A stretch of DNA of 64,000 bases. Source: Macrostomum lignano (lineage: Eukaryota). Each line of letters opens with the position of its first letter. The stretch's first letter is position 1. Below, in pieces: positions 3,355 through 63,539 of this stretch. Both the position numbers and the translations under genes were made by a program. The DNA is taken from NCBI GenBank assembly GCA_002269645.1, contig NIVC01000677.1:124001-188000 (forward strand). The letters run 5' to 3'. The notes under the pieces are model-generated. The model saw only the letters and a list, made by a program, of their open reading frames with translations, made no database searches and was not told the origin of the DNA.

Positions 3355-4005
<651 letters not shown>

Positions 4006-11432: not shown

Positions 11433-11439
11433 TTTTATA
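11433..11439 (-). promoter_or_regulatory. TATA box of the sHSP gene
   Basis: The minus strand reads CTATAAAAG, ~125 nt upstream of the ATG and immediately downstream of two HSEs. Confidence 0.8.
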
Positions 11440-11451
11440 GACTGGCACTGA

Positions 11452-11471
11452 GGAAGCTTCTCGAATTTTCT
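11452..11471. promoter_or_regulatory. Heat-shock element, 4 perfect alternating nGAAn units
   Basis: gGAAg cTTCt cGAAt tTTCt. Confidence 0.9.
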
Positions 11472-11484
11472 TGCCCACTGACTC

Positions 11485-11504
11485 ATTCTGGAAATTTCTA
11501 GAAA
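11485..11504. promoter_or_regulatory. Heat-shock element, 4 perfect alternating nGAAn units
   Basis: aTTCt gGAAa tTTCt aGAAa. Confidence 0.9.
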
Positions 11505-43130: not shown

Positions 43131-46100
43131 TTAATTTAGCGAATCCACAATTTGCCGCAGGGAGTCCGCAGCGGACTCTGCACTCGGACGGGAGTCTGGA
43201 GTGCCGCTCCAACAGCGCTCCATCAGGCTCCAGAGCTGGTCGGGCATGCCCGGCAGCCGCTTGGGTCGGCGGTCCTGGGCACCGGGTAGCTGGATTGGCC
43301 CGAAGCTGGGCAGGAGCTCAACGTACTCCGGGTGGCGCCTGCCAGTGCCTTCGCTGCGGGAATCGGGGTAAATGGGGGGCATCGGTGTATAGAGAGCTGC
43401 ACAGTAGGATGGACAACAAACGCAAACGCTATTTAGTTAGGCCAAGAAGTTTTCCCTCCGGCACTGTTTTTAGTGGTTATTACTTACAACCTCCAGATTT
43501 TCATAGTAGATGGATGTTTAAAAAGGCTATGCATTTATTTAGCTAGTCTTGGTGTGACATACCCTTCAAATTGCCTAGAAGAGGTTTGTAGCCTAGTGGA
43601 AGGTGTGAATTGGCTGTCTTATACCGATTTGAACTATACTGCTTTGTGCGTTTGGCTGCTCAAATTTAGCTTACCACTATAGACCCTCCCCCTCCACTGA
43701 ACTGATCGATTTCTGTTTATACGTACAGTACTTCTTCGCAATGTACATCGTTCGTCCTAACTACATGTACTCAGTTCTATAATACAATATAAAGGACCAA
43801 CGCGTCAGTTAAGAAACGCTGTTTACAACTTGCGGCTCAAGCCAATTCAATCGCTTCTTCTCAATCTCAATTCATCACAATGGCGACGAGGACTTTTGGC
43901 CAAATTCCAGAACTTTCAGCTGAATCAGACCTTGAAATCTACGCTGAGCGCATGAACCAATATTTCATATGCAACAAAGTTGAGACTGCCGAGGCCAAGC
44001 GTGCTATCTTTCTTACTGCCATTGGTGAGAAGTACTACAAATTGCTTCGCGACTTGTGTCAGCCACAGAAACTGACTGAAAAATCCTACGAAGATCTGCA
44101 GGACATACTAAAGAAGCATTGCTCGCCCGAACCTTCGGAGATCGCCGCACGTTTCAAATTTCAGCAACGTCTTCAGCAAGATGGTGAATCTTTCGCTAAC
44201 TTCTTGGCAGGGCTGAAAAACGCTGCAAACCATTGCAAGTTTGGCGAGTCCCTTCAGGAGCGACTTCGAGATCAGTTTTTGTTCGGAATGAGAAGCGACA
44301 CTTTCCGCTCTAAGCTACTCGAGAGTTCGGATCATTCGTACGCTGGGCTGATCAAACTGGCCTTGGACCTCGAAGCTGCTCACAAATCTTCAAGCGAGAT
44401 GGCGCACACTTCAGCAACCAATCGAGTCAGCGCGAATCCATCAGTGGCACGCCCGAGAGCACAGTACAACATCAGCCAACACTCTGGTCCCGCTGGATCA
44501 GCATCCAAGCCAGGCACCTGCGACAGCTGTGGAGGTCCACATTCGCGTCAGAACTGTAAATTCCGTAACTCGAAATGCCATGCTTGCGGGAAGGTTGGCC
44601 ACATTAAGAAGGTTTGCAGGTCAGCAAAATCTGTGAAACTCCTGGAGGAGAATGAAACCGGGTCTCAGTACGACGAAAAAAACTACGAGGAAGAGCCAAT
44701 ATTTCATGTCTCAATGACTTCCAAGTCCCCGATTCTGGTGCCTCTGCAAATCGAGGAAGTGCAATCTCATTTTGAGCTGGACACAGGATCTGCTGTAAGT
44801 CTCGTTCCCAAGGCATTCTATGATAGCCATCTGTCTCATCTGCGACTGCATCCGTCCAAGACGACTCTGCGAACCTACACGGACCAGGAGTTCTCTCCGA
44901 TCGGAGAAGTAACAGTGAAGGTCACTTACGAAGGGCAGGAAGCTTCTCTGCCGCTACTCGTGGTGTCTGAAGGCAGCGCTCGACTCCTGGGACGCAACTG
45001 GCTAACCGTCATCCGCCTAGATTGGCCTCGCTTGACAGCACCCGTCAACTCGTTGATCGCAGCACCTAACGATATGGCTACTGAGCTGGTCCGTCAGTTT
45101 TCGGATGTCTTCGCCGAGGGTCTCGGTAAGTATCGCCTCAGTGAAGTCGACCTTCATTTACAAGAAAATGCTACGCCAAGGTTTTACAAGGCGCGACCGA
45201 TTCCCTATGCTCTGCGTGAGACCGTCGATTTAGAGCTTCAGCGCATGGAATCAGAAGGGGTCATCACTCCAATAGCGACTTCTCAATGGGCTGCCCCGAT
45301 TGTGCCAGTAGTAAAGAAGGACGGGTCTGTACGAATCTGCGGAGATTACAAGTGCACATTCAACCAGGTCGCAAAGCAAGAGCACTACCCGCTGCCGAGA
45401 ATCGAAGATTTATTTGCGAGACTGGGTGGCGGCCACAAATGGAGCAAACTCGACCTGGCAAAGGCATTTCTGCAGCTCCCAATATCAGAAGACAGCAAAC
45501 AGTACCTCGTTATCAACACTCAACGTGGACTGTTCAAGGTGAACCGCCTGCCATTCGGTATCTGCTCGGCCAGTGCAATTTTTCAACGCATCCTTGACAG
45601 TCTGCTCGGGCATCTCAACGGCGTCCAGGTTTATCAGGACGACATCCTGGTTACCGGGTCTTCACTGGCGGCTCACAAAGAAAATCTGCTGCAAGTCCTG
45701 CACAAGCTTCAAGAGGCCTCAATTCCTCAATTCATTTGAATCCTCAAATGAATCCTCAATTCATTTCCAGGGAATTCGCAAGCTTTACACGCAGCAACGG
45801 CATTCGGCATGTCACGTCAGCGCCTTACCATCCTGCTACGAACGGTCAAGCTGAAAGATTTGTACAAACACTGAAGCTGCACATCAGGAAATCCGGTCAC
45901 TCCGCCGCTGCTTTGCAACGCTTTCTCTTCGCCTACAGGGTAACGCCGCATTCGACTACAGGCACCTCTCCCAGCGAACTGCTTCTGGGACGTCGGCTGC
46001 GCTCCAGACTGGACCTTCTGCGGCCATCTCTAGTAGACCAAGTGCGCGATCGGCAAGAGGCTGCCGCTGAGTCCCAGCGCCGCACCCGGTTCTTCGGGAT

Positions 46101-49100
46101 CGGCGACAATGTTCGAGTGAAAGGATTCGGCAAGGAATCCGGCTGGCTGCCTGGAGTGGTCGTCGCGGCGTCGCAACGGAACTACGATGTTCGAGTTGGC
46201 ACCAGCATCGTCCGGCGGCACGTTGACCAGATGCTGCCTGATTCGGCGCAGCCTCCGCCATCCGCCGCTGACTCTCAACACCTCGGCACCAGCATCTCGA
46301 CTCCATCGTCGGCGCCTCCGGCTCTAGATGTTCTGAGCCCCGCGGCTGTCTCCGAGCCCGCTATCCAGCCACCATCGGAGGAAAGAGCCGCGGTCCCCAC
46401 AGGCCCGGCAGACAAGGCGGCAGCCGCGGACGCGGACGTACCTGACCAGTTGCCAGAGGGTGCGACCCGCCGATACCCGCCTCGAATTCGGTCATGTCCA
46501 GAGCGACTTCAAGTGGGGGTGTGATGAGTGACTGTGCGGAAGCTGACAATGATCTTGAACTGACTTTTCGCAAATTCTCCTGTCTTTCATGCAACCCATT
46601 ATTACGTATGTTTCTCCAATACAAATTATTGATTCACTACTAATTCTAGTTTTCGACAATGCAATATTTCGCTATTTTGTTCGACACAATTTTATTTCCT
46701 TACTTTTCATCTGCTCTGCAATTGTGTTTGCTAATTCGATTGTTTTCCAATACTACAATACTACATGTACGCTATCGTCGATTCGCTTTTCGTAAAAATT
46801 CATCTCATTGATCCCACTTCCCCTTGGGGAGGGAAGTGTGAATTGGCTGTCTTATACCGATTTGAACTATACTGCTTTGTGCGTTTGGCTGCTCAAATTT
46901 AGCTTACCACTATAGACCCTCCCCCTCCACTGAACTGATCGATTTCTGTTTATACGTACAGTACTTCTTCGCAATGTACATCGTTCGTCCTAACTACATG
47001 TACTCAGTTCTATAATACAATATAAAGGACCAACGCGTCAGTTAAGAAACGCTGTTTACAACTTGCGGCTCAAGCCAATTCAATCGCTTCGTCTCAATCT
47101 CAATTCATCACAGAAGGAGTTTTAACCTAGTGGTTAGAGCGTCTGACTCACGACTGAAAGGTCGGGGGTTCGATTCTCGACTCCAATCGGAACAATTTGT
47201 GTCCTTGAGCAAGACACTTAACTCTGCATTGCTTCAGTTCACCTAGCTGTAAAATGGGTGCCAGCATTAGCTGGGGTAATTGAGGGTGTGTGTGGCGACC
47301 CCATAATCATATACATTGGACTGAACAGCCGTACGCAGCCTTCAGATGCGCCGCGCAATAGCTGCGGCTGAGTACCGGTTGCACATCTGGCCATCAGGGC
47401 AGGTGTAATCAATTATTACGACTTATTACCCTCCAAATAGGCACCTTACTCACAACAAATACCAAAGAGCAATTCCAAGACTGAAGACATCAGTGCTCGC
47501 GTCGGGACTGGACCTGCCTGTGGCAATCTCTGGCGCTAAGTAGACCGGAATGCTGGTCGTTTGCTGGTTGTTATGGCTGTAGCACTTCACTATCCCGAAC
47601 GGCGCTAACTTCACCTTGTTCAAATCTTCGTTAACCTAGAAGAATAATTCGAGCCAATTTCAAAGCAAGAAAGCTAAGCTTTTAACGCATGTACAAAAAT
47701 AGCTCGTCGATTTTCATACCCAAACATTGCTCAGTGCAACATCCTGATGAACGAGCTCGCTGGAGTGAAGAAACTGCAGAGACGTCGCAATCCGTAAGCC
47801 GATCTTCAAGCGCTGTTTTACGGGCAGGCTGTAGCGCTGCATCAGAGTCCAGGCGTCGCAGAGCATCAGCTCCATGTAGATCTCCACCGTGTACCAGTTC
47901 TCTTCCGGCCGTCTCTTGTGCAGCCGCACGCCGACTACATGAACCAGATTTGGATGCTCAAAAGCGCTGTAATGATACGGCATAAAAATCGATATTCATG
48001 CATAATGCAAACTGCAATGTTCAGAAAAAAATTGTGAATTTTTATTATTTTTAAACTGGTCATAAGAAGACCTGTCAAAAGTTATTCATTTGTGAGATTA
48101 TTTGAAATGGACGCCCGAAGTAGACAGTTCTTCAAATAAGAGTAAGTCTTTTTAATTTCGACTTTTGACTCGTTTCGTTTTAAGCACGTCTTCGAACGAC
48201 CATTCCAAAACAGGCTTTTTTTTACCATAAATACATGAAGCTGCATTACCTGCTGTGGTACACCTCTGTCGCAATGTCGTCCAGACTAGTTTCACAGGAA
48301 ATTATCCTTTTAGCTGCAAGCGTTGGCTCGCCGATCTCATTCAAAACTCGAAACATATCGCATTGAGCCGCAGATCCGAGCTTTCCTTCCGTGTCAATTC
48401 GAAATCCGCGAAACTTGTACTTTGAGGTAACATCCATCGTAAGCAGGTGAAGTCGAGCGACTCTCGGGTAAAGAGCCTTGATATCGGATCGCTCCTTCTC
48501 GGTCAGCTTCATGGATTTTTCGACCAGCTGTTCCGATGACGTGATTTTTTCGACGAACTCCCTGTGCTGGTTTTCGAACCACCCATTTAGTGAAGTGATG
48601 AGGCAGTCAACGAGATTTTCCTTGCTGACTGAACCTGCAATTATGCATTTGCATGTAAAAATAGCGCTTCAATCATTTCTTTACGTAACTTATCATGGAA
48701 AGGCAAACGAAAAGTACAATAAAATCAAGATCCCAAGAGCGAATTGCAAAGCACGCCATGAAAAGCCATTGTTTCAAAGATGTGAAAAACTCACTAAGAT
48801 AGACATCTGCTTGATATTCCTTCCACCTTTCATCTTCAACAGGACTAGACATTGACAGTACAAGACCTGGATTCTTCACTATTAGCTTGATGAAGTGCTT
48901 CATCTTTCTGAGGATAATGCTCAAAGGACCCAGCATAAAGTCCTTCGAAGACAACGAGTAGCCCACGAGCAGCGTCTTCTTCAACACCTGGTACGCGGGC
49001 GTCTGTTCCACATCCTTCTCGTACTCTGCGACTACCTGCTTCAAACGATCGAAATCGTTTTGACAAGTCTTCAGAGCCCCATCCTTGAGGAAGTCGCAGA

Positions 49101-50808
49101 ATGACGCAATTATTCTGTCGTTGATGAGAGCATGAATCTCATCGACGCACTTCTTCTCAATGTCTTTCTGAGACATATCGGCTGAAATCACCGATTCCGA
49201 GTACTTCAGCGCTCTGACTTCGTCGAGAATGAGCGGCTTTCTTTCGGCGAAGAATCGACCTGCTTGTCTCAACAGCTCGTCTCGATTTTTCTCCACGATG
49301 CTCTTAGACTGCTGGTGGATCTCCTGCTCCAGGCTCTTGATTTGGTAGAGCGCCTTCTTCTTGCGCAAGTTCGACTCTTTGATGTTGGTGGCCTTGTCCA
49401 TGAACAGTGTGAGAATCTCGCTTTGAATGCGCCTCAGGCCGCCACCAGAACTCACGATGAGGTTTCGAAATTGATCCTGAGCGAACTTGAGAATTCTCGT
49501 CTTGACCTCCTCGAATCGTCTGACCCACTTTGAGTTCTCCATCTCCTTGAGAGCCTCAGGGTCGAGCTTGTTCTTCTTGATCATGAGTTCCTTTTTGCGA
49601 CGGAATCGCCTTACTTCCCAACACGAGACGCAAAGGAACTTGTTGCACGTGTCTCTGGTTTCGTTCGGGCTGATGTAGCCGAGACGCTGCAGCTTAGAGA
49701 AGACGCGCTCGGCCTTCTCTTCTTCAATCTGCTCCGTTGTGCTTGATGATTCTACCGCTGTTTCTCTGGACACATCCATCTTGGTAATTAGATAGAAAAC
49801 CTCAGCTCCAATCTCTGGGAGTTGAATTGCTTTCAAATCTTTCTGGACCTAGGAATGTTTTTCATGTATTTTAGTTCGCAGAAAGTGCGACTTTGATTTG
49901 CACTGTATTATTACTGGTATTTGAAAGTGCCTCGTGAACAAAAGACCTTACGGCAATGGTGATGCCCGAGTTCGAGTCGATGACGTAGATGATGATCGGT
50001 AGAAACGAGTCGATCGCCCCCAGCGTCAGCGAGTCCAGAGACGAGTTCTCGTTCAGTCCTGGCGAGTCGATGATGTCGATGCCGTGTCGCAGGAACTCGC
50101 ACTTGATGCCGGCCTCGACAGTCGAGCTGATGAGCTCATCATTCTCGCGGTCCTCGTCCTTCAGCTTGACGAGGTCCTCCTCGATTGTCGGCTTCTCGAG
50201 GTACTGGACGTCTCCGATCTGCTCGCCGGTCTTGGATCGCACGAGCACGTAGATTCGGTCGGAGTAGGTGAGCCGGGTGACTCGGGCGGTGCACGGGGAC
50301 TGCGACTGAGCCACGAAGGTGCCGCCTAGGAAATACTTGAATCAATGTATATAAAAAACATAAACCTGGTCTCAATGTTTAACTGCAACACATTAGTTCG
50401 GGCTATGTGCTGAGTGTGTTCTTGATGGGAGCACTCAGCTTCCTCCGTTTTACCTGCATTTTCATGCGAACATATTTTGCCAGTCTGTATCCTGGGTTTA
50501 ACTCTCAACTTACCTAAAAGCTCATTGATGAAGGAGCTCTTGCCCGACTTGGTTTGCCCAACAATGATGATGCACGGCTTGCTGTCATCCTTGGAGCCGG
50601 TCTCGTTGCCTCGGTACAGCCGCTTGATGGCTTTCGTCAGTGTCGGCAGTTGAAGCTTTTGCTTGAGCTCCTCGGATGACTCCACAGACAGGCTGCTGGC
50701 GATGGGGCCATCCAGCAGAGCCTGGGTGCTCTCCAGCTGCTCACTGATCAGGTCGCGGTTGATGTGAAACTCAGAAATTTCTTTCTCCAACGAGTCAACA
50801 TCCGACAT
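43131..50808 (-). CDS. Paralogue A: dynamin-like GTPase + helical region + pseudokinase (DSTYK-like), 7 exons, ~919 aa
   Basis: Exons: 50808-50514, 50325-49952, 49848-48795, 48634-48250, 47966-47720, 47635-47454, 43353-43131 (2760 nt, open, GT-AG). G motifs: GQTKSGKS, PCTAR, DSPG, TKMD. Kinase motifs are degenerate: GKLGSAAQC, HQDVALSN, KLAPFG. Confidence 0.88.
43880..45739 (+). CDS. LTR element gag-protease-truncated RT ORF (619 aa)
   Basis: Two CCHC knuckles (CDSCGGPHSRQNC, CHACGKVGHIKKVC), protease LDTGS, and RT motifs LDLAKAFLQ, LPFG and YQDD. The ORF ends shortly after the DD motif. Confidence 0.92.
   Translation: MATRTFGQIPELSAESDLEIYAERMNQYFICNKVETAEAKRAIFLTAIGEKYYKLLRDLCQPQKLTEKSYEDLQDILKKHCSPEPSEIAARFKFQQRLQQDGESFANFLAGLKNAANHCKFGESLQERLRDQFLFGMRSDTFRSKLLESSDHSYAGLIKLALDLEAAHKSSSEMAHTSATNRVSANPSVARPRAQYNISQHSGPAGSASKPGTCDSCGGPHSRQNCKFRNSKCHACGKVGHIKKVCRSAKSVKLLEENETGSQYDEKNYEEEPIFHVSMTSKSPILVPLQIEEVQSHFELDTGSAVSLVPKAFYDSHLSHLRLHPSKTTLRTYTDQEFSPIGEVTVKVTYEGQEASLPLLVVSEGSARLLGRNWLTVIRLDWPRLTAPVNSLIAAPNDMATELVRQFSDVFAEGLGKYRLSEVDLHLQENATPRFYKARPIPYALRETVDLELQRMESEGVITPIATSQWAAPIVPVVKKDGSVRICGDYKCTFNQVAKQEHYPLPRIEDLFARLGGGHKWSKLDLAKAFLQLPISEDSKQYLVINTQRGLFKVNRLPFGICSASAIFQRILDSLLGHLNGVQVYQDDILVTGSSLAAHKENLLQVLHKLQEASIPQFI
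45750..46524 (+). pseudogene. C-terminal half of the LTR element integrase
   Basis: PQFISREF...SAPYHPATNGQAERFVQTLK...YRVTPHSTTGTSPSELLLGRRLRSRLDLLRP. The zinc-binding domain and the first catalytic residues are deleted. Confidence 0.9.
47116..47420 (+). mobile_element. tRNA-derived SINE with a CORE-like central domain
   Basis: A box TAGTGGTTAGAGC (47128-47140) and B box GGTTCGATTC (47167-47176). The next segment, TGTGTCCTTGAGCAAGACACTTAAC...CTGTAAAATGGG, resembles the MIR CORE consensus as I recall it. Confidence 0.8.
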
Positions 50809-51411
50809 GGCTAATGCGTTTTGGAACGACAATTTTAAGCTTTCATTCTTTACCGGTCTAAACATGCAGCTGCGGGTCCTGTAAAATGACCATGGCCTCC
50901 TTTATCAGGTCTGCTAGCGGTCTGGGCAGGATAGGAGCTGCAGTGTACAGCAAAGATGCAGCACTTTGAGGTTGTCGGTACAGTTAGTGCTGATAAACAA
51001 GACAGTAATTCCAGCACTTGCTTGTTTTAATATTTTAGTGCTGTATTTAACATACAGTGAGCTGACGAATCGATCTGGAGCTTTGCCACTAACTACGATG
51101 TATGCATACAATGCATGTACTCAGCATCTAGCAAGACTGCTGTTTCCGGTTGTCCTTCAAGCTGGTATGCACAAGCTTAACGAGACTTTGCATAATCATG
51201 ACTGTGCAAAGGACTGCATAACTGATAGCTGGCTCTGTTTCCAGGTTGGATACTGAATTGAAGAAATATTTTATGCATCTGAATTTGAACCAGCCAACGC
51301 AGTCAAGTGCAGATCTTAGAGATGGTCGAAAATTTCATGGCAGCAACAGTTCACGCTCTTGCCAACAAATAGCCCACCGAAGTTAGGCCTGCCCATCTTC
51401 TAAGCGGGACG

Positions 51412-51570
51412 AGCTACAGAAGGGTTGGGGTGCCAGCTACAGAAGGGTTGGGGTGCCAGCTACAGAAGGGTTGGGGTGCCAGCTAGAGAAGGGTTGGGGC
51501 GCCAGCTACAGAAGGGTTGGGGCGCCAGCTACAGAAGGGTTGAGGCGCCAGCTACAGAAATGTTGGCTGC
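51412..51570. repeat. 23-bp minisatellite (AGCTACAGAAGGGTTGGGGTGCC)
   Basis: About 6.5 copies read directly. Confidence 0.93.
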
Positions 51571-51749
51571 AACGAGCTGCTTATCAGTAAGCGCAGGGGC
51601 GCAGGGAGCCGGATTCCAAGGGTCCATCTTGAAGAAAGTAAAATAAGGAGATGGCAGCTAGCAGAAAACAGAAGTTTTGCTGAGCTTTGCTTATGTGCCG
51701 GTTTCCAGTACGAGCATAGCGTTATACACAAATAACAACATGTAAATGT

Positions 51750-53780
51750 AATAAAACATAAACTGCTTCGCTTGCTGCGGAGCAGACGGTCCCGCTGATG
51801 CGGCAAGCGCAGAAATCGCAGCCTGTCTGGCAGAGCGACCCGACCATCAGGCAGGCGCACTCAGGCAGTGACGCTGAAGACGCGTTTGAGCGCTTTCTAG
51901 ACGAGCAGCAGCAAGCCGCTATCGACGACACCGTCCGGACCATCACTGCAGCCGGCCCCGAAGTGAAGAGCCGTGCAGTTTGGACAGCCTTTCGGACTCT
52001 AACGCCACGGGTGCAGAAAGCCCGTGGCACTGAATCTGGTCGGTGACACCCCGGAGGAGCGCAGGAATGAATTGCGCGACTTCTTCGCCGGCATCGTGAA
52101 CGCGCCTGCGTCGCCGCTGCCCACTAGCTTTTCGCTCCCACTGGACACGCCACTCCCAGCTGAGGAGGACTTCTGCACAAGCCCAGTCACCAAGGAGGAC
52201 GTTGTGCTGTTCGCTCGATAATCACCAGGCGGCAAGGCGCTCGGCTCCGCTGTGTGGCCTCCCACGTGCTCGCCGGCGCCCCTGCATCCACCGAGTGGAC
52301 TGTCGCGCACATCGTGCCGATCCCGAAGAAGGCAGGGACAACGCGGAAAGAAGACCACCGCGGGATCTCGCTGATGTCCTGCACCGCGAAGCTCTTCAAC
52401 CGGCTGCTGCTCGATCGTCTGCAGTCTGTACTGGTCGTTTTCGCGTCCGCCAGAAGGGCATCTTGCTCGCCGGGGCGGGCCGCGAACCCTCTTGGGCAGC
52501 CAAACAGGATGTTGTTGCTCGGTGTCACGTGCTCCGCAGTCCGGGCACACGTCGGAGTCGGACAGGCCGAGCCGGAATCTGGTGGCGGCGGCGAGGTTGC
52601 TGCAGCCGGCACGGAGCTGGTTGACCAGGACCTCTAGTCTCCTCGGGAGGGCTGGGAGCTTTGGCCACGAGCGTTGCGGCCCCAAAGCTCGAGATCTAGT
52701 TTTCGTCTTTTGGCATGGCATCCAGGTAAGCACTGGCTGTCATGAGGGGCGCGTCATGATTGCTCTGATCAGCGGTCGCCAATCTAGCCGGCCTGTCTGC
52801 GCGTTCATTCATGGGGATGCCGCAGTGAGCCGGGATCCAGGTGATGCGGATGGAGTGTCCGTTACTCTGGTTCCAAATTTCGGATACGAGCCGGCTGTTG
52901 CTGCGCTGGCCCGCCATGATGCTGTGAATGGCCGCCTGGGAGTCGGTGAAAATGTCGATACATTGATGTTCTCTAGTATTCTGAATGGCCAGCAGGATGG
53001 CTTGTAGCTCTGCCTGGGTGCTGCTGCAGATATTCCCTGCAGCGCTGGTGACGACCCGGCCCCAGGATGGAGTGATGATCACCGCTGTAGTCGGTCCAGA
53101 CGCTAATCGGGTGGGAGCCGCGCTCCTCGAGGTACCTCAGTGCTGTTGCGCTGCGGAGAGCGCCGTTCCTCTTCGTGCTGCTGCTGGACTGGGTTCACCT
53201 ACCTCGGCGGTCTGGTACTCCACGTGGTGAAAGTCCTCCGGCGGCGCAGAGGACTTGCCTGGGCGACCTTCCGTTCGATCCGAGCCGTCCCTCAGTCCGA
53301 AGCGCTGCCCGACCGCCAGACAGCTCGGCTATGGTAGGCGATGGTCGAAACCATCCTGCTATACAACGCCGAGACGTGGACGCTGACGGCTACGCTAGAG
53401 CGGCAGCTGGACTCGGCACACTCAGGGCTGCTCCGTGCGGCCTTTCGAGCTGACGAGAGCGTCGAGACCGAGGCCCTGTACGATCGGGCCAAGCTGCGGC
53501 GCCCGTCCATCATCCTGCGCCGGCGGCGACTTCAACTGGCGGGCCACGTGATCCGGGCCGAGGGCTACTGCCCCCAACCTGTTCAGGACGTCCTGCTGCT
53601 CACCTTGCAGGGTCCGTTCAGGCGGGGTCAGGCCCGACCCCGTCGATATGTGGACTGCCTGCTATGCGAAGCAGGGGCGCCCGACACTGCCAATGGAGCG
53701 AACTTTGTCCGTTCTCAGGATCTGCGGCGCTCCATCTGACGCGCCCTGCTCTCACTGGGACGCTGCATGCGAGCTGTGTA
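51750..53780 (+). mobile_element. Degenerate RTE-like LINE: linker, RT N-terminus and C-terminal domain, with the RT core missing
   Basis: WTVAHIVPIPKK...HRGISLMSCTAKLFNRLLLDRL (52290-52435), then FTYLGG...AMVETILLYNAETWTLT...LRRRRLQLAGHVIR (53190-53739), with stops and frameshifts. Confidence 0.88.
52437..53110 (-). mobile_element. 3' fragment of an RNase H-bearing LINE (I-group-like), antisense within the RTE-like LINE
   Basis: RNase H motifs QAELQAI, IFTDSQAA and WIPAHCGIPMNERAD, followed by a C-terminal CCHC motif CPDCGARDT/HILFGCP (frameshifted). Confidence 0.85.
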
Positions 53781-55124
53781 TTTTGTTTGTGCTGTTGTTT
53801 GTTTTACAGTGCCAATTCAGAAAAGGCCTTAATAACGAGTGCGTCCTTCGCGAGCAAGACAGAAATTCTTCGCGGCATCCCCGGAATGAGGCACCGCAAA
53901 AATCTTGAGGAAGACTTTTGGCGCAGGCCTGGCGCAGTTTCATGACATTGTGTGGCTCTTTACACTCTCAAAGGAAGGTCCGATAGAAGCTACTTACTGG
54001 CGCAAAGGGCGGCGACTTCAATGTAATTGAGTATAGCTAAAGATTATACCGGAAAAAATCATCAAATATTTTAAGACATGAGTATAACTCCTCCGATTGA
54101 TTTTAACAAAAAACCTCACACTCGGCAATATGTTAAAGTGTCCACCCCAAGTTAAATTGGTCAACAAATGTGAGCTTTAATCCAACTCTTGCCAAAACTC
54201 ACCAGCCTAAGCCAGGGCCTTGTGACGCAAATCACTCCACATGGTTGAGACGAGAACCGCAGGCGTGGCGTGAATTGCGGCACTTGGGGCTGACGCCTGA
54301 GAGAAGTTGACCAGTGGTTCAGGGTGGAGACTTGGTGGGTGCAAACTGAATAAAGAGCGTACGTACCTAACGGTGGAAAAGTTTCTGTACCAGAAATTGA
54401 TAATTCGTCTGAATGTTTTCCTTTGCTTCAGTTTCTCGCTTGGATGCCCTTTGGATATCGAAGACTGATCGGCTCCTGAGTCCGCGACGTTGAGCTTTTT
54501 AATCGCTTTTAATAACCGAGTGCTCACTGCTTCAGATGAGTTCCAAGGATTTTAGAGTGAGAGCTGTTCATTATCGGGCTCGTGTGAATTCGAGATGCAA
54601 CAGAATGAAGATCTTTCTGTCATCCGTGTGATTCCTTCGATTTTCTCTGAATGATAAGCAGGTATCCGGTCCGGTCTGAATGATAAGCTTGTCTTAAATT
54701 TAATCGCTCAAAATCCATTCACTGAGCCTACCTCATTTGGATTCCAAGTTGCGCAAAAAATCAAGCCAAATGAACAAAAATAATGAATAAGAAACTGACA
54801 GATGGCGATCCCACCATGCAGTTATACGAAGAGCGTAATATAAGAAGTCGAGAGAGTAGCAATTTATTCAATAAAAATTTCAATTTACTGATTGGCAACT
54901 GTCAGAGAAGCATGCAGAATGGGTATTGAGCTACTTGAGTAAACTAAATTAGTGGCCATATATTTGTCTAAATGAACTCTTGGCCCACAACTCATTGAGC
55001 ACCGCAAACTAAGCAGTAGATAGAGTTCAATCAAGGCAGATTGATTAAACGGTAGAAAAATCACCCAGGAAAAGGAAAAAGAAAAGGAAAGCTAGAAAAA
55101 CATCTTGAATTTGCATCATTGTGT

Positions 55125-55479
55125 AGTATTGCTTTTGTCAGCCTAACTGAGAATAAAGCCACCCAAAATGAGAATCCTGCCTACGCTGACTGCGAGGGCC
55201 CGGCTGCGTGCAGCCTTAGTCTATGGGCCATAGACAATAAAGGACAAGCAAAGTGATAAAAAGCCATCCAATGTGAGAATCGATTGGTCTATGTGTCGTA
55301 TTCTTTTATTTTTATACCTTCTGAGGTTTTGAGCTATATGACTAGCCAATCCTAGCTTATCCTTTATAGTCTATGGCTCATAGACTAGGCTGGACGCAGC
55401 CAGGCCCTTCGCATTCAGCGTAGGCAGGATTCTCACTTTGGATGGCTCTACTCTCAGTTAGGCTGACAAAACCAATACT
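55125..55479. mobile_element. MITE / foldback element with ~130-bp imperfect terminal inverted repeats
   Basis: AGTATTGCTTTTGTCAGCCTAACTGAG...GAGAATCCTGCCTACGCTGA is mirrored by TCAGCGTAGGCAGGATTCTC...CTCAGTTAGGCTGACAAAACCAATACT. No clear TSD. Confidence 0.8.
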
Positions 55480-55791
55480 TAATCTTCTAATATCTGTGAA
55501 AAACCATTATGGTGGCACAATTGAAACAGCTTTCAAACCATTCCACCAAAACTGAGTTATAGAATTCCAGTTTGTACTGCGTTTGTACTACTTGTCATTT
55601 ACATGTACGCGAAGTGGGTCTAAACGGCAGAAAGCAACCATTTTCCTTGTAAATTAAAATTGAGCTAATTTTTTTTTCATAATTTAACCAAACTTGGCCA
55701 CTGGATCAGCTAGTAGTATAGTTAGAATAGTGAGCAATATTGAGTAAGCAATGCATGGTTAGCATTATTGAAATCATCCTAGTAAGAGCGT

Positions 55792-58700
55792 CTAAGACTC
55801 CAGCGAGTCCACAATTTTCTGCAGGGATTCTACAGCTTTCTCCGCTGTCGGTCTGGAGTCTGGGGTGCCGCTCCAGCAGCTCTCCATCAGGTCCCACAGC
55901 TGGTCGGGCTGGTCGGACATGTTGGGCAGCCGCGTCGGCCTGCAGTCCAGGGCGCCGGCGAGCAGGATGGCTCCGACACTGGGCATGATCTCGACGTACT
56001 CCGGGTGGCGCTTGCCCGTGCCTTCGCTGTGGATTTAAATCAATGGCATCTCGCATCAATGGCTCGAGAATCTCTGCTTGCTCGTCCGCTACCTCAGGGC
56101 TACCGGGTGAGGTGGTCACCCACCTCTTGGACTCTCCAGGGCGACTGCGCTGCAAGACATCTGGCATTCCAACTGTCTGCAGCGGCCCCTCAGGCAGTGT
56201 AGAATTCCTTACGAGCTGTTACCCCCTAATAATAATTTACCCCCTTACCTAATAACATTGCGCAATCTTTTTTGAACTTACAAAAGATACCAAAGAGCGA
56301 TTCCAAGACTGAAGACGTCCGCGCTCGTGTGGTAGCTCTCGCCTCGGACCAGCTCAGGCGCAAGGTAGATTGGCGTTCCAACTAAGGTTCGGTTTACAAA
56401 GCCTGTACTCTTCATGAGTCCGAAGTCCGACAGCTTCACTTGTCTTAAATCCTCACTCACCTGAGGGTTTGTAAGGGTTTGTGGGCTGTTAAAATCATAA
56501 AAACAGTCGGTCCACTCTCAAAAAAATGCTTACGAGGACGTTGGCGAGTTTCACGTCTCTGTGAATCAGCTCGCTCGAGTGAAGGAACTGAAGGGCCTTC
56601 GCCAGCTCCAAGCCGATCTTCAGGCGCTGTCGAACGGGCAGCCTGTGGCGCTGCATCAGATTCCAGGCGTCGCAGCACATCAGCTCCATGTAGATCTCTA
56701 CTGTCCATCGCTTCTCATCAGATTTGCTTTTGTGGAGCCTCACGCCGACTACGTGCACGAGATTATCATGCTCGAGAACGCTGGAATGTAACAACTTCTC
56801 ATGCTATTATGAGAACTAGAAGTTATGCGATCGAAATATGTGCACTATATCTACTCAAGTATAGTAACTTACCTGCTGTGGTACACTTCCGTTGCGATAT
56901 CGTCAAGACTAGGCTCGTCGGATACGATTCTCTTGGCCGCTAGCGCTGGCTCTCCGCTCTCGTTCAAAACTCGGAACACCTCACCTTGAGCTCCGGATCC
57001 GAGATTTCCTTCCGTGTCGATTCGGAACCCGCGGTACTTGTACTTGGAGATAACATCCATCGTAAGCATATGCAGTCGAGCAACTCGCGGGTATAGAGTC
57101 TTGATCTCGGATCGCTCCTTCTCGGTCAGCTTCATACAGCTTTCGACTAGTTGCTCCGATGAAGCAATGTTGTCAAGAAACTCTCTGTGCTGCTTTTCGA
57201 ACCATTCTTTCAGCGAGGTGATGAGGCACTCGACAAGATTTTCTTTGCTGATTGTACCTGAAACAAATGAAGACAAACAGCTGATTGTGCAATGGTAGCC
57301 TAGATAATTTAATTGAAAAGCGAGTAGTTCGACCGTTTATACCATAGAAAATGACAATGTCTGACATACAAAATATATTACTAACCTAGATACTTTTCTG
57401 CCTGATATTCCTTCCACTTTTGATCCTGGATCGGTGTGGAGATTGACAGAACGAGACCTGGATTTCTTACCATCTGTCTCACGAAATGCTTTATCCTGAA
57501 TATTATAACATTCAAAGGACCCAATAAGAAGTCCTTTGACGACAACGAGTAGCCTTCGAGAAGCGTCTTCTTTAACACCTGGTACGCGGGCGTCTGTTCC
57601 ACATCCTTTTCGTACTCTGCAACTTTCTGCTTTAAGTCGTCGAATTCCTGTAGGCACAATCTCAGAGCCCCACCTTTGAGGAAGTCGCAGAATGACGCAA
57701 TTATTCTGTCGTTGATGAGAGCATGAATCTCATCGACGCACTTCTTCTCAATGTCTTTCCGAGACATATCGGCGGTAATCACTGACTCCGAGTACTTCAG
57801 CGCTCTGACTTCTTCGAGAATGAGCGGCTTCTTTTCGGCAAAGAATCGACCTGCTTGTCTCAACAGCTCGTCTCGATTTTTCTCCACGATGCTCTTAGAC
57901 TGCTTGTGGATCTCCTGCTCCAGGCTCTTGATTTGGTAGAGCGCCTTCTTCTTGCGCAAGTTCGACTCTTTGATGTTGGTGGCCTTGTCCATGAACAGTG
58001 TGAGAATCTCGCTTTGAATGCGCCTCAGGCCGCCACCAGAACTCACGATGAGGTTTCGAAATTGATCCTGAGCGAACTTGAGAATTCTCGTCTTGACCTC
58101 CTCGAATCGTCTGACCCACTTTGAATTCTCCATCTCCTTGAGAGCCTCAGGGTCGAGCTTGTTCTTCTTGATCATGAGTTCCTTTTTGCGACGGAATCCC
58201 CTTACTTTCCAACACGAGACGCAAAGAAACTTGCTGCATTTCTCTTTGGTTTCATTCGGGCTGATGCATTTGAGACTCTGCAGCTTGGAGAAGACGCGCT
58301 CGGCCTTCTCTTCTTCAATCTCCTGCGCTGTTTGATTGGCTTCCTGCTCTGTGTCTTTCGAGACATCCATCTTAGTGACAAGATAGAACACCTCAGCTCC
58401 CAGCACCGTTTGCTTAATTCTTGTTAAGTCGTTTTGGACCTGCAGTTTTAGTAGTTCGGTGGAAGAATAAAATGTCAACAGAATTGCTAACAGAAATATA
58501 CTGCATGGGGCCTTCTCTGGATTCCTTTCACACCAATTATTATTAATGATCACAGATTGTACGATAGTGGCAAGCTGCAATACATTGTTAGAAGTCGGAA
58601 ATTTTTATTAGAACTCACGGCAACGGTGATGCCCGTGTTCGAGTCGATGACGTAGATGATGATCGGTAGAAACGAGTCGATTGCTCCCAGCGTCAGCGAG

Positions 58701-59783
58701 TCCAGAGACGAGTTCTCGTTCAGTCCTGGCGAGTCGATGATGTCGATGCCGTGTCGCAGGAACTCGCACTTGATGCCGGCCTCGACAGTCGAGCTGATGA
58801 GCTCTTTATTCTCGCGGTCCTTGTCCTTCAGCTTGACGAGGTCCTCCTCGATTGTCGGCTTCTCGAGGTACTGGACGTCTCCGATCTGCTCGCCGGTCTT
58901 GGATCGCACGAGCACGTAGATTCGGTCGGAGTAGGTGAGCCGGGTGACTCGGGCGGTGCACGGGGACTGCGACTGGGCCACGAAGGTGCCGCCTGCAAGT
59001 ATCGAGCACATTTTACATTATGAAATTACGCTCGTTCCTGGTTTTTCTGGCTCAGAGGTTCTCATCAGCTGCCGGATTTTCTTTCAAGTGGAATCTAAGC
59101 AGCAAAACTAAGCTTGCTGTGTGTACAGTGATTTCTACGAATTTAAAAAAATTTCAGTTCTCATGTGAGAAGAATATTAATCTATCTGTTTGGCAGGAGT
59201 GAAAATGGTATTAAATTTTTTAATAATGCTGATCAATGCATCGGGAGTTTTTTGAATGTGATATCAACTTATTGGGTGAATTTCCATTGAGAGAAAAGAA
59301 ATTAAACTTCAATTATATCACACATACTACTGTAATCTAACAATTCGTGGTTCCTATTGAGCAGATCTAAATGGATTTTATGGATACAAGCTTGAGAAAT
59401 GACAAAAAACATTGACAGCGCTGACATGGACAGAATTTTATTTAACAAAAGTTAAACAGCTGCTCACCCAGAAGTTCATTGATGAAGGAGCTCTTGCCCG
59501 ACTTGGTCTGTCCAACAATGATGATGCACGGCTTGCTGCTGTCACTGGAACCCGTCTGGTTGCCCCTGTACAGCTGGTTGACCTTTTGTCTCACGGGTTC
59601 AAATTTTAGCGACTCTTTCAATTTTGCCGAGAATTCCGGAGACAAAGCCTTCGAAAAGCTTTCCGTTAACAGTCTCTGCGTAGTGTCCAGGTGCTCTTTG
59701 ATCAGGTCCCGGTTGCTTCGGAACTCGGCGATCTCCTCGTCCAGAAAGCCGATCGGCTGCGCCTCCGCTTGCGGGATGGCCAT
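55792..59783 (-). CDS. Paralogue B: dynamin-like GTPase + helical region + canonical protein kinase (DSTYK-like), 7 exons, ~929 aa
   Basis: Exons: 59783-59468, 58992-58619, 58439-57386, 57257-56873, 56780-56534, 56460-56282, 56026-55792 (2790 nt, open, GT-AG, same intron positions as A). Motifs: GQTKSGKS, DSPG, TKMD; GSGAQGEV, AAK, HRDVKLAN, DFG, GTPIYLAPE, DVFSLG, CW...RP. Confidence 0.9.
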
Positions 59784-60849
59784 GGCGGCTTTTTTGCAGC
59801 TTCAAGTCTCGGTTTGGGGCGCACAGAGAGCCACGCGTCTTTGACACTTCTTGTAGCCTGGAGAGGCAGTGCTTTGTATTCGAGCCCTCGTACGCAGCCA
59901 AAAGTGTCTGCCCTACTCCCTGGCCACTCCAGTGTACGCTTGGCTGGCTGGGTGCGCTGCTGCGAAGGCTTCTCTCTTCGAGCATTGGCCTTCGTTTATG
60001 TGGAGTTTAGGCGGAGTATAATTCAAACTCCGCTTCTGCACACCAGATTGCTCGAGGCCGCGTCGTTCACGATGCAGTTCAATTGCAAAAAAGATGGAAA
60101 ATTAGCCTTTGCATCTGTTAGAATGGGTGGGGCGCCAGATACAAAAGGGTTGGATGCGCGTTGGCTGCGTACCTGGTCCTCTGGCAGCTGTTGAGACGCA
60201 TTTCTGCATTCAATTCAAATAGCCGAAAATTGAGAATTTTAACAAAACATGAAACAAAGCAAAACAAAGAATTTGAATGCTTTGTTGAGCTCTACATGAA
60301 TATCAATTTGAAGCTTTTAAGTTGGCCAATTTATTAGCAGACTTTTAGAAAGTCGTTTTTTACGATTACCTACTTGTTTTGGCCAGCAGAACTTTTCTTT
60401 CATCGAAAAAACAAGGAGGCACCTGTACACTAGGTTGAAGGAACATTGATTAGAACGATCTGCTATGTGGGATCGTCTGCTGGTTTGCAAACACTGTTGC
60501 GAGAGTGAGCAATTTGAATTATACCAGTCTGACTTTAGACAATCGACTAGCAATCTAATGCGGCCCCCCGAAGGGAGGATGGGGCGCCCAATAAGCAAGG
60601 AGCAAAAATAGTTCATAGAAAGAAATTAAAAAAGCACATTTTCTTAAACACCAATTCCTTCTTCAGTTTTAAAAATTACTTTATTCATATAAAATTGTCA
60701 CGGACAATGATAAGTGCTATAAATCTCTTTTTTTCTAAAATTAACAAACAGACAACAAAATATAGCTTTCACAAAGACAACAGGCATTCCCGCTAAATAA
60801 AAATTATTCCCAAGACAGCAAGCATCCCCCTCCAAAAGTAAGCAACCAC

Positions 60850-61885: not shown

Positions 61886-61892
61886 TGTTGAA

Positions 61893-63531: not shown

Positions 63532-63539
63532 TTGTTGAA

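What the first reader, a model, noticed from the sequence alone, without database searches (positions are those of the whole stretch)
43131..59783. Tandem pair of dynamin-like GTPase-kinase fusions: one active kinase and one intact pseudokinase
Seen: two same-strand 7-exon paralogues with identical intron positions and fully open reading frames (~919 and ~929 aa). B has canonical kinase motifs (GSGAQG, AAK, HRDVKLAN, DFG, APE). A has replaced several of them: Gly loop GSAAQC, HRD to HQD, the catalytic-loop Lys to Ala, DFG to PFG. It keeps the VAIK lysine, APE and the fold. Established: losing the DFG Asp removes Mg2+ coordination, a standard pseudokinase criterion, and the dynamin-like domain plus kinase layout is that of DSTYK/RIPK5. 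Inference: several catalytic substitutions without any stop or frameshift suggest a selected pseudokinase rather than decay. The pair could work as a sensor or regulator plus executor that heterodimerises through the GTPase/stalk, analogous to paired kinase-pseudokinase immune modules and paired bacterial dynamin-like proteins. I know of no description of such a pair in animals but could not search the literature.
Basis: partly seen in the sequence, partly recalled or inferred. Interest (0 to 1): 0.85.

Follow-up and report, generated by a model that had tools for sequence, protein, structure and literature searches.

The report
Flatworm DSTYK-like kinase and pseudokinase neighbours
Two neighbouring genes of the flatworm Macrostomum lignano encode dynamin-like GTPase-kinase proteins of the DSTYK superfamily, and one is a young copy that has lost its kinase catalytic residues while the rest still looks constrained; this is a tidy but fairly ordinary kinase/pseudokinase pair.

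Summary
Two minus-strand, 7-exon genes sit in tandem, with identical intron positions and phases and all junctions GT-AG. B is 929 aa. A is 938 aa, or 919 from Met20. B has every kinase motif. A has GSAAQC, HQDVALSN and PFG but keeps AAK, the αC Glu and APE.

The window is Macrostomum lignano. Both genes belong to the GTPase-competent "DSTYK-like" branch of the DSTYK superfamily, and the N-terminal half is closest to bacterial dynamin-like protein (BDLP). A is sister to B, so it is a young, lineage-specific pseudokinase.

Selection evidence favours a retained pseudokinase over decay:
- Kinase ω on the A branch is about 0.33 against 0.04 for B, but only if A and B share a synonymous rate.
- No family-invariant C-lobe residue is changed (0 of 16), against 7 of 15 invariants before APE.
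- No stop codon occurs (simulated P about 0.01).

The GTPase core exon is 97-99.5% identical in DNA among A, B and paralogue C, while the flanking introns do not align. That points to gene conversion.

Expression, nucleotide binding and any A-B interaction are untested. Clusters mixing active and degenerate-kinase DSTYK-like genes also occur in Lingula, Saccoglossus and Ptychodera. Canonical DSTYK has the opposite defect, a dead P-loop. I rate this moderately interesting.

The parts
55792..59783 (-). Gene B: DSTYK-like dynamin-type GTPase plus active-type protein kinase, 7 exons, 929 aa. Exons: 59783-59468, 58992-58619, 58439-57386, 57257-56873, 56780-56534, 56460-56282, 56026-55792.
   Evidence: Manual model with GT-AG introns. 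Pfam Dynamin_N plus Pkinase at 134 bits. 97% identical to M. lignano PAA74831.1 (P0001). Its first 398 aa and its kinase part match UniProt models P0004 and P0006, apart from one D-to-E difference in P0004.
43131..50865 (-). Gene A: paralogue with an intact GTPase and a predicted pseudokinase, 7 exons, 938 aa (919 from Met20). Exons: 50865-50514, 50325-49952, 49848-48795, 48634-48250, 47966-47720, 47635-47454, 43353-43131.
   Evidence: Manual model with GT-AG introns at the same positions and phases as B. Pfam Dynamin_N plus Pkinase at 80 bits. The kinase part is identical to UniProt model P0007.
50536..50559 (-). A P-loop (G1), GQTKSGKS. G3 DSPG lies at 50057-50068 and G4 TKMD at 49774-49785. 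All three are intact.
   Evidence: None of the 50 family-invariant N-terminal positions is changed in A.
49952..50325 (-). A exon 2 (GTPase core, 374 nt). It is 97-99.5% identical in DNA to exon 2 of B (58619-58992), of the other B copies and of paralogue C.
   Evidence: dS is 0.03-0.09 in this exon against >1 elsewhere for comparisons with C. The 150 nt of flanking intron align no better than random sequence.
48360..48377 (-). A Gly-rich loop, GSAAQC (B has GSGAQG at 56983-57000). The VAIK-type Lys in LAAKRI is kept, at 48303-48320.
47726..47749 (-). A catalytic loop, HQDVALSN (B has HRDVKLAN at 56540-56563). The Arg and Lys are lost. The catalytic Asp and Asn are kept.
47594..47602 (-). A has PFG in place of DFG (B has DFG at 56419-56427). 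APE is kept at 47528-47536.
43598..47112 (+). LTR retrotransposon inside intron 6 of A, antisense to the gene. The LTRs lie at 43598-43879 and 46831-47112. The gag-pol ORFs lie at 43880-45739 and 45736-46524.
   Evidence: The LTRs are 282 nt and 99% identical. Pfam finds RVT_1 and rve_3.
47116..47428 (.). Short dispersed repeat in intron 6 of A. It also occurs in introns and flanks of the other DSTYK-like loci (L001, L002, L005).
   Evidence: blastn gives 82-89% identity.
51999..53950 (.). Non-LTR retrotransposon fragment in the 4.9-kb spacer between B and A. It is also present downstream of the other B copies.
   Evidence: Pfam finds RNase_H and RVT_3. The region is colinear with L001 and L005.

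Best explanation
Shown:
- B and A are tandem paralogues of the Macrostomum lignano DSTYK-like family.
- Each protein has an N-terminal BDLP/mitofusin-type dynamin-like GTPase with a long helical stalk, fused to a C-terminal protein kinase domain.
- B has every catalytic motif of both enzymes.
- A arose from the B lineage after B split from paralogue C.
- A keeps the GTPase motifs and every family-invariant N-terminal residue.
- A has lost a cluster of kinase active-site residues: Gly-loop G to A, HRD R to Q, catalytic-loop K to A, DFG D to P, and activation-loop GT to SI. It keeps the kinase C-lobe core.
- The GTPase core exon and the middle of the stalk exon are kept nearly identical between A, B and C by gene conversion. 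The N-terminal helices, the distal stalk and the kinase domain have diverged.

Inferred:
- A is a retained pseudokinase, not a dying copy.
- It most likely still binds GTP.
- It most likely co-assembles with the active paralogues through the shared G domain and stalk, as dynamin-superfamily proteins do. In that assembly it would act as a non-catalytic partner that scaffolds, tunes or competes with kinase output.
For: Identity of the family:
- Gene models and motifs.
- Database names and Pfam domains.
- The only PDB sequence relative of the N-terminal half is Nostoc BDLP (2j68, E=1e-13).
- An AF2 model of B' (P0001, mean pLDDT 77) has BDLP 2j69 as its top fold hit over 727 alignment columns.

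Origin of A:
- In NJ trees A is sister to (B, B'), with 100% bootstrap for the kinase domain and 98% for the GTPase plus stalk. D is an older, separate branch.

Selection on A:
- Pairwise ω for the kinase domain, A against B, is 0.23 (dS 0.93, dN 0.215).
- Three-point dN puts about 0.18 on the A branch and about 0.03 on the B branch.
- A codon maximum-likelihood model with equal neutral rates in A and B gives ω_A=0.33 and ω_B=0.04. It rejects ω_A=1 (p=5e-9) and ω_A=ω_B (p=3e-9).
- Independent of any clock, 7 of 15 family-invariant kinase residues before APE are changed, against 0 of 16 from the P+1 loop onward (Fisher p=0.002). C-lobe changes fall on variable sites (MWU p=5e-6).
- With about 165 random substitutions, only 0.8% of simulated kinase ORFs stay free of stop codons.
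- AF2 gives A's kinase part a confident bilobal fold with a disordered activation loop.

Other support:
- Gene conversion.
- A second A copy, P0011, carries the same HQDVALSN motif.
- Active and degenerate-kinase DSTYK-like genes sit together in M. lignano (C then D), Lingula, Saccoglossus and Ptychodera.
Against: - There is no transcript evidence for A. The NCBI annotation of a related copy of the locus (L005) calls no gene downstream of B, but an N-gap lies there, so this says little.
- Without the equal-rate assumption the outgroup is saturated and ω_A=1 is not rejected. The no-clock model fits slightly better (lnL difference 2.3).
- The open frame over the GTPase and stalk is partly explained by conversion from functional B copies, not by selection on A.
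- A carries a very young 3.5-kb LTR element in intron 6, which could impair expression.
- Nothing here tests A-B interaction, GTP binding or ATP binding.
- AF2 confidence for A's kinase fold leans on an alignment made of active kinases.
Confidence: 0.55

Rival explanations
1. A is a redundant duplicate on its way to becoming a pseudogene. Its kinase has simply lost constraint. The frame is still open because conversion from B keeps repairing the N-terminal two thirds, and because not enough time has passed for a stop to hit the remaining roughly 275 codons.
For: - The unconstrained codon model cannot exclude ω_A≥1.
- Conversion tracts cover exon 2 and nt 121-720 of exon 3.
- A has a recent LTR insertion in intron 6.
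- I could not retrieve any transcript-based gene call for A.
- The genome is recently duplicated and holds several B copies, so redundancy is high.
Against: - Kinase dS between A and B is about 0.9, yet there is no stop or frameshift, and both indels are in frame. The simulated probability of staying stop-free is 0.003-0.03.
- None of the 16 invariant C-lobe residues is changed, although about 29% of kinase sites differ (P=0.004 under uniform change).
- ω_A=0.33 under equal synonymous rates.
- All 12 splice sites are intact.
Confidence: 0.25
2. A is still an enzyme with an unusual mechanism, for example a Mg-independent kinase like CASK, which also lacks the DFG Asp. In that case the pair would be two kinases with different properties.
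For: A keeps the VAIK Lys, the αC Glu, the catalytic Asp of the HRD motif, the catalytic-loop Asn and APE. That some kinases lacking the DFG Asp are active is established knowledge (CASK); I state it from memory and did not test it here.
Against: Several further catalytic and ATP-site residues are lost together: two Gly-loop glycines, the HRD Arg, the catalytic-loop Lys and the activation-loop Gly-Thr. Seven of 15 invariants around the active site are changed. The Pfam kinase score drops from 134 to 80 bits.
Confidence: 0.07
3. A acts independently of B. The diverged kinase-like domain and N-terminal helices have become a new binding module, such as a decoy or sensor, on a working dynamin-like GTPase. 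Physical linkage to B is only a by-product of tandem duplication.
For: - Non-synonymous change is about fivefold faster and is focused on the kinase N-lobe, the activation segment and exon 1.
- The family forms fast-evolving tandem clusters in several invertebrates, a pattern typical of expanded defence-type gene families. The defence analogy is my inference.
Against: No signal of ω>1 survives the equal-rate model. The identical G-domain core shared with B and C is more simply read as compatibility for co-assembly, or as neutral conversion. No expression or infection data are available.
Confidence: 0.13

Closest known systems
Canonical DSTYK (dusty kinase, 'RIPK5') of vertebrates, arthropods, molluscs and echinoderms
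   Same: It is a homologue. A profile built from the flatworm, nemertean and hemichordate proteins hits fish DSTYK at E=1.7e-120. BLASTP of B' (P0001) against fish DSTYK gives E=1e-47 over the stalk and kinase. The length (929 aa) and the C-terminal kinase position are the same. Databases name the flatworm proteins DSTYK.
   Different: Canonical DSTYK has a degenerate G1 and G3 (for example GQDCAARY and PCPS) and no Pfam dynamin hit. It is therefore a pseudo-GTPase plus active kinase with DLG. It forms its own clade in the tree. A and B keep GQTKSGKS, DSPG and TKMD, and A has the opposite defect: live GTPase motifs and dead kinase motifs.
Bacterial dynamin-like protein BDLP / mitofusin-class dynamins
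   Same: The G-domain sequence matches (2j68, E=1e-13). BDLP is the best fold match over the G domain plus helical bundles (2j69). Paired tandem DLP genes that work as heterotypic partners are known in bacteria; I state this from memory.
   Different: BDLPs carry no kinase domain. No membrane paddle was identified here. GTP-dependent dimerisation of A or B is untested.
Kinase-pseudokinase paralogue pairs such as Fam20A/Fam20C (PMC5413348), STRAD-LKB1, HER3-HER2 and JAK JH2-JH1
   Same: A catalytically dead paralogue keeps the kinase fold under constraint next to an active relative. In the known cases the pseudokinase allosterically regulates or scaffolds the active one.
   Different: No interaction has been shown here. 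The proposed interface is a dynamin-type G domain and stalk, not the kinase domains. The pair is young and limited to one flatworm lineage.
ROCO proteins (LRRK1/2): a GTPase and a kinase in one polypeptide
   Same: One chain couples a GTPase to a kinase, so the nucleotide state could gate kinase output.
   Different: ROCO proteins use a Ras-like Roc-COR GTPase, not a dynamin-type one. They are not homologous outside the kinase fold, and their domain order differs.
Ancient GTPase-intact, kinase-degenerate DSTYK-like proteins of other invertebrates (Lingula XP_013414054, Nematostella XP_032222785, Ptychodera XP_070553798, Glandiceps XP_077984882)
   Same: The architecture and the class of defect are the same: an intact GKS P-loop with the HRD and/or DFG motifs lost. 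They often lie beside an active paralogue.
   Different: Those are old, deeply diverged clades. A is an independent, recent loss nested inside the active Macrostomum clade, with its parent gene still next door.

Membership tests
Active eukaryotic protein kinase | Gly-rich loop GxGxxG, VAIK Lys, αC Glu, HRD Asp with catalytic-loop Lys/Asn, DFG Asp, APE | tested here: met
   This row is for gene B. It has GSGAQG, LAAKRI, E705, HRDVKLAN, DFG and APE. Pfam Pkinase scores 134 bits. Activity itself was not assayed.
Active eukaryotic protein kinase | The same catalytic motif set, scored for gene A | tested here: not met
   A has GSAAQC, HQDVALSN (Arg and Lys lost) and PFG (Asp lost). Nine of 38 family-invariant kinase residues are changed in the 8-sequence alignment, and 7 of 31 in the broader 11-sequence one.
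Pseudokinase | A recognisable kinase fold that lacks at least one of the VAIK Lys, the HRD Asp and the DFG Asp | tested here: met
   A lacks the DFG Asp. Pfam Pkinase and PK_Tyr_Ser-Thr are still significant. AF2 predicts a bilobal fold with pLDDT mostly 78-95 outside the activation loop.
Pseudokinase | Lack of phosphotransfer activity | not testable with these tools
   This needs a biochemical assay.
Dynamin superfamily (BDLP/mitofusin-like) | G1 GxxxxGK[ST], G2 Thr, G3 DxxG and G4 [NT]KxD motifs in a large G domain | tested here: met
   Both A and B have GQTKSGKS, PCTAR, DSPG and TKMD. Pfam Dynamin_N gives E=1e-19 for A and 8e-20 for B.
Dynamin superfamily (BDLP/mitofusin-like) | A helical stalk or bundle after the G domain, with an overall fold like solved DLPs | tested here: met
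   The AF2 model of P0001 has long helices from residue 337 to 655. Its top PDB fold hit is BDLP 2j69_A (E=1.5e-14, 727 columns).
Dynamin superfamily (BDLP/mitofusin-like) | Nucleotide-dependent G-domain dimerisation and stimulated GTP hydrolysis | not testable with these tools
   This needs biochemistry, or at least multimer modelling.
DSTYK superfamily | Full-length homology: N-terminal G-like region, stalk and C-terminal 'dusty' kinase | tested here: met
   The profile search recovers named DSTYK and DSTYK-like proteins end to end. BLASTP against fish DSTYK gives E=1e-47.
Canonical DSTYK orthologue group | Placement in the clade that holds vertebrate DSTYK, with its degenerate P-loop and HRDIKLKN...DLG kinase signature | tested here: not met
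   In the NJ tree A, B, C and E fall in a Macrostomum clade outside the monophyletic canonical DSTYK group. Their P-loop is intact and their kinase signature differs. The tree has no bootstrap support values and is distance-based.
RIP kinase family | The kinase domain clusters with RIPK1-4/ANKK1 | not tested
   Reviews PMC10492769 and PMC9573974 argue that DSTYK itself is not a genuine RIPK. I made no tree with RIPKs.
Functional kinase-pseudokinase module | Co-expression and physical or allosteric interaction of the two paralogues | not testable with these tools
   No RNA or protein data are available here. The only indirect hints are the shared G-domain sequence and the recurrent clustering.

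The most novel reading that the evidence does not exclude
The DSTYK superfamily may be an ancient metazoan system in which dynamin-like GTPase-kinase proteins work as mixed assemblies of catalytically complementary paralogues. The three types are GTPase+kinase+, GTPase+kinase-dead and GTPase-dead kinase+. On this reading the mixed gene clusters in flatworm, brachiopod and hemichordates reflect functional pairing through a shared G domain. Vertebrate DSTYK, a human disease gene, would be the lone pseudo-GTPase survivor. The A/B pair would be a newly born pseudokinase partner, with conversion keeping its G domain compatible with B and C, and so a tractable model for how such partners arise.
Probability: 0.15. 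Interest if true: 0.7.

Novelty: new member of a known kind. Interest (0 to 1): 0.4.

Why it matters
Pseudokinase paralogues that regulate active kinases are a well-known theme, so the pair itself is not surprising. Its value is context for DSTYK, a poorly understood kinase linked to urinary-tract malformation and spastic paraplegia.

The flatworm genes show the ancestral form of the family: a working-looking dynamin-type GTPase fused to the kinase. Different lineages have then switched off one or the other enzyme. I found no paper in the held library that describes the dynamin-like domain of DSTYK or its pseudokinase relatives.

M. lignano is amenable to RNAi and transgenesis. A young pseudokinase sitting beside its active parent is therefore a practical place to test what the GTPase does to the kinase, and what a dead-kinase partner adds.

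Tried and rejected
1. I tried to look up the spliced A and B proteins in the assembly index. I used database proteins P0001, P0008 and P0342 instead.

2. At first I read the other B loci as lacking A. I withdrew this. In L001 the colinearity ends at a full-length LINE insertion that runs to the end of the locus. In L005 it ends at a 2.5-kb run of N. Whether A is present in those copies is unknown.

3. The unconstrained 3-taxon codon model gave ω_A=3.7 and ω_B=0.02. I rejected this as an estimate. With a saturated outgroup the synonymous changes cannot be divided between A and B, and it would imply roughly 17-fold different silent rates in adjacent paralogues. I report it as a caveat.

4. I tried P0011, a second A copy, for an A-versus-A' comparison. 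The model is patchy and frame-shifted, so it only shows that HQDVALSN is shared.

5. The word-indexed homologue searches never reached vertebrate DSTYK. The full HMMER scan did.

6. I tested whether A and D descend from one ancestral pseudokinase by inverted duplication of a pair. I rejected this: A groups with B at 100% bootstrap in the kinase tree and D branches earlier.

7. I considered cDNA-mediated conversion for the exon-limited identity. It is unlikely, because the first 120 nt of exon 3 are highly diverged, so the tract does not cross the exon 2-3 junction.

8. PolyA signals and flank similarity were uninformative.
Full report
**What is there**

The region holds two genes on the minus strand. 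I rebuilt both from three-frame translations and splice-site inspection.

- Gene B spans 59783-55792. It has 7 exons, a 2790-nt CDS and encodes 929 aa.
- Gene A spans 50865-43131.
- All introns are GT-AG and intron phases are identical.
- Exons 2-5 have the same lengths in both genes (374, 1054, 385, 247 nt). Exons 1, 6 and 7 differ by multiples of three.
- Neither CDS has an internal stop.
- The proteins are 77% identical.
- Pfam finds Dynamin_N and Pkinase in both. The kinase score is 134 bits for B and 80 bits for A.

B has GSGAQG, LAAKRI, HRDVKLAN, DFG and APE. A has GSAAQC, LAAKRI, HQDVALSN, PFG and APE.

**Origin and naming**

The best database hits are Macrostomum lignano proteins. P0001 (PAA74831.1) is 97% identical to B. 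P0004 and P0006 match B over their shared parts. P0007 is a mis-spliced model that contains A's kinase domain exactly. UniProt and NCBI name these and their relatives 'dual serine/threonine and tyrosine protein kinase(-like)', that is DSTYK. The window is therefore flatworm genomic DNA.

Intron 6 of A is 4100 nt because it contains two insertions:
- An antisense LTR retrotransposon at 43598-47112. Its LTRs are 282 nt and 99% identical, and it carries RVT_1 and rve_3 domains.
- A short dispersed repeat at 47116-47428.

Without these insertions the intron would be about 270 nt, close to B's 255 nt. The 4.9-kb spacer between B and A holds a non-LTR retrotransposon fragment.

**The N-terminal half**

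- The only PDB chain matching residues 1-656 of B by sequence is the Nostoc bacterial dynamin-like protein (2j68, E=1.2e-13).
- An AlphaFold2 model of P0001 (mean pLDDT 77) shows a G domain followed by long helical bundles. Its best PDB fold match is BDLP 2j69 over 727 columns. The remaining hits are kinases matching the C-terminal domain.
- G1 (GQTKSGKS), G2 (the Thr in PCTAR), G3 (DSPG) and G4 (TKMD) are intact in A and in B.

**Family landscape**

I ran a full HMMER scan of 1.84 billion representative proteins with a 7-sequence profile, then a motif census and name look-ups. Three classes emerge.

1. GTPase motifs and kinase motifs both intact. This class holds M. lignano B, C (P0008) and E (P0010), two nemerteans, Saccoglossus, Ptychodera, Lingula and amphioxus.
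2. GTPase motifs intact, kinase motifs degenerate. This class holds A, together with old clades in Glandiceps, Ptychodera, Lingula (P0253) and Nematostella (P0234).
3. P-loop and G3 degenerate, kinase intact (HRDIKLKN...DLG). This is canonical DSTYK of fish, bee (named 'RIPK5'), Artemia, spider, tardigrade, scallop and sea cucumber.

Further points:
- Pfam sees only a kinase domain in fish DSTYK.
- BLASTP of P0001 against fish DSTYK gives E=1e-47 over residues 342-926, which is the stalk plus kinase.
- In a distance tree canonical DSTYK is monophyletic, and A nests inside the Macrostomum clade of fully motif-intact genes. That tree has no support values.

The intact 'dynamin plus kinase' layout, however, belongs to the DSTYK-like branch and not to vertebrate DSTYK. 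Reviews also dispute that DSTYK is a RIP kinase (PMC10492769, PMC9573974).

**Age and origin of A**

In bootstrapped NJ trees A is sister to (B, B'). Support is 100% for the kinase domain and 98% for the GTPase plus stalk. C, E and D branch earlier. All six introns and both flanks of A and B lack detectable similarity. Kinase dS between A and B is about 0.9. The duplication is therefore not recent in absolute terms, but it is specific to this lineage.

**Is A's kinase domain decaying or retained?**

- Nei-Gojobori values for the kinase domain are dS 0.93, dN 0.215 and ω 0.23 for A against B. B against B' gives ω 0.19. dN to the outgroup C is 0.53 for A and 0.38 for B. That places about 0.18 of dN on the A branch and about 0.03 on the B branch.
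- I wrote a 3-taxon codon likelihood model. Without constraints it cannot divide synonymous change between A and B, because C is saturated, and it does not reject ω_A=1.
- Assuming the two adjacent paralogues share a neutral rate, it gives ω_A=0.33 and ω_B=0.04. It rejects ω_A=1 (LRT 34, p=5e-9) and ω_A=ω_B (p=3e-9). The no-clock fit is better by 2.3 log-likelihood units, which I keep as a caveat.
- Two tests need no clock. First, among residues invariant in ten active-type relatives plus B, A has changed 7 of 15 located before the APE motif. These are G670A, V675M, R784Q, K787A, L792W, D804P and G820S, all in the ATP, catalytic or activation segments. A has changed 0 of 16 from the P+1 loop onward (Fisher p=0.002).
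- Second, C-lobe differences fall on variable columns (MWU p=5e-6). With 29% of kinase sites differing, zero hits on 16 invariants has P=0.004.
- In the N-terminal region, 0 of 50 invariants are changed.
- Random substitution of B's kinase CDS at A-branch levels (about 165 changes) leaves no stop in only 0.8% of trials.
- AF2 on P0007 predicts A's kinase part as a confident bilobal fold with a disordered activation loop. This is weak evidence, because the alignment consists of active kinases.

Together these favour a retained fold with specific loss of catalytic residues. That is the signature of a pseudokinase rather than a pseudogene.

**Gene conversion**

- Exon 2 (374 nt, the GTPase core) is 97-99.5% identical in DNA among A, B, two further B copies and C. 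The rest of C has dS>1 to the others. The 150 nt of intron on either side align no better than random sequence.
- In exon 3, nt 121-720 of A differ from the B copies L001 and L002 by 0-4 positions per 60 nt, mostly 0-2. The first 120 nt and the last 180 nt differ by 11-22 per 60 nt.
- The B copy in L005 carries an A-like tract at nt 781-840.

Exchange between A and B-type genes is therefore continuing but is confined to the GTPase core and proximal stalk. This has two consequences. Part of A's open frame is maintained by copying rather than by selection on A. And A, B and C share an essentially identical G-domain core. The second point is compatible with hetero-assembly through the G interface but does not prove it.

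**Other copies and a second pair**

The M. lignano assembly GCA_002269645.1 holds at least three further copies of the B locus.

- L001 and L002 have B' head-to-head with C. C is followed on the same strand by D. D is an 877-aa product with a Dynamin_N hit but no kinase hit, and it has HGN for HRD, DLG, and no APE.
- This genome therefore contains a second, independent 'active then pseudokinase' tandem.
- L001's copy of C lacks exon 2.
- L005 is colinear with window 50981-61884 at 96.4% identity, but then runs into an N-gap. L001 runs into a LINE insertion. Whether A accompanies those copies is unknown.

**Mixed clusters elsewhere**

- Lingula: pseudokinase P0253 lies 4 kb upstream of active P0196 on the same strand, with a third gene nearby.
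- Saccoglossus: five family genes lie in 23 kb. Two of them have HRD and DFG degenerate.
- Ptychodera: three family genes lie in 24 kb, one with only weak kinase hits.
- Lineus P0012 has no such neighbour.

**Mechanism**

Shown by sequence: GTPase motifs are intact in both proteins, kinase motifs are intact in B and broken in A, A's C-lobe is constrained, and the G-domain core is shared.

Inferred from what is known of dynamin-superfamily proteins and of pseudokinases: A binds GTP, assembles with B (and perhaps C) through the G domain and stalk, and acts as a non-catalytic partner that modulates or scaffolds kinase output.

The rivals are a dispensable duplicate drifting towards pseudogenisation, an atypical still-active kinase, and an independent new binding function.

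**Literature**

Searches of the held library found no paper linking DSTYK to a dynamin-like domain, to pseudokinase paralogues or to Macrostomum. The library does not cover most subscription journals, so this is not proof that no such paper exists.

**Verdict**

The pseudokinase reading is reasonably supported, and the functional pairing is untested. As a kind of thing, a pseudokinase paralogue next to its active parent is well known. What is new is the family it occurs in and the wider pattern of alternating enzyme loss in the DSTYK superfamily. I score interest at 0.4.

Noticed in passing
window 49952-50325 and 58619-58992; L002 11273-11646, 6642-7015; L001 10782-11155: Exon 2 (GTPase core) is 97-99.5% identical in DNA among A, B, two other B copies and the otherwise 54%-identical paralogue C. 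Identity stops within a few bases of the exon borders, and the flanking introns are unalignable. This looks like exon-confined concerted evolution. Why the tracts coincide with exon ends is unexplained; homology-limited conversion is my guess.
   Followed up: partly
window 48795-49848 (A exon 3) versus B copies in the window, L001, L002 and L005: Exon 3 is a mosaic. In nt 121-720, A is nearly identical to the B copies of L001 and L002, and in places closer to them than to its own neighbour B. The L005 B copy (P0342) carries an A-like tract at nt 781-840 and a strongly diverged 3' part.
   Followed up: partly
L002 15851-20902 (gene D) downstream of C (10001-14725); the same arrangement in L001: There is a second tandem 'active kinase then pseudokinase' pair in the same genome. 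D keeps GQTKAGKS, DTPG and THMD but has HGN for HRD, DLG, and no APE. It is an older, independent pseudokinase.
   Followed up: partly
L001 about 6100-6900: The L001 copy of paralogue C lacks exon 2 and the start of exon 3, and its gene call has only a kinase hit. It may be a truncated copy or an assembly problem.
   Followed up: no
P0210 (Merluccius DSTYK) and 15 other canonical DSTYK representatives: Canonical DSTYK from vertebrates to arthropods has a degenerate P-loop and G3 motif in a region colinear with the dynamin-like G domain of the flatworm proteins. This human disease gene therefore looks like a pseudo-GTPase-kinase. I found no description of this in the held literature.
   Followed up: partly
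L003 (Lingula), L004 (Saccoglossus), L006 (Ptychodera): These loci hold tandem clusters of 3-5 DSTYK-like genes that mix intact and degenerate kinase domains. One pseudokinase signature (DLRxTN ... INTLKxRDD ... PYPDGxxPFH) is shared between the hemichordates Saccoglossus and Glandiceps and, in looser form, Nematostella.
   Followed up: partly
window 43598-47112: A very young LTR retrotransposon (282-nt LTRs, 99% identical) lies antisense in intron 6 of A. Its internal part is truncated: gag, protease and RT, then only the integrase C-terminus.
   Followed up: yes
window 60698-61983, also 63538-64000: An 18-bp satellite array of more than 1.2 kb lies just upstream of B. It gives long repeat ORFs in three frames and is also present upstream of the L005 copy. 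Other long tandem arrays lie at about 3321-4205, 22599-23320, 24038-25787, 27253-28065, 33025-33561 and 39349-40100.
   Followed up: no
window 10504-11478 (-): This ORF has two Hsp20/alpha-crystallin domains, so it is probably a small heat-shock protein gene.
   Followed up: no
window 38452-39423 and 39555-40328 (+): A PTB/PID domain ORF is followed by an SH2 domain ORF with a Gln-rich linker. This is a Shc-like adaptor gene, interrupted or overlapped by a 'GWGDTTDWV' tandem repeat on the other strand.
   Followed up: no
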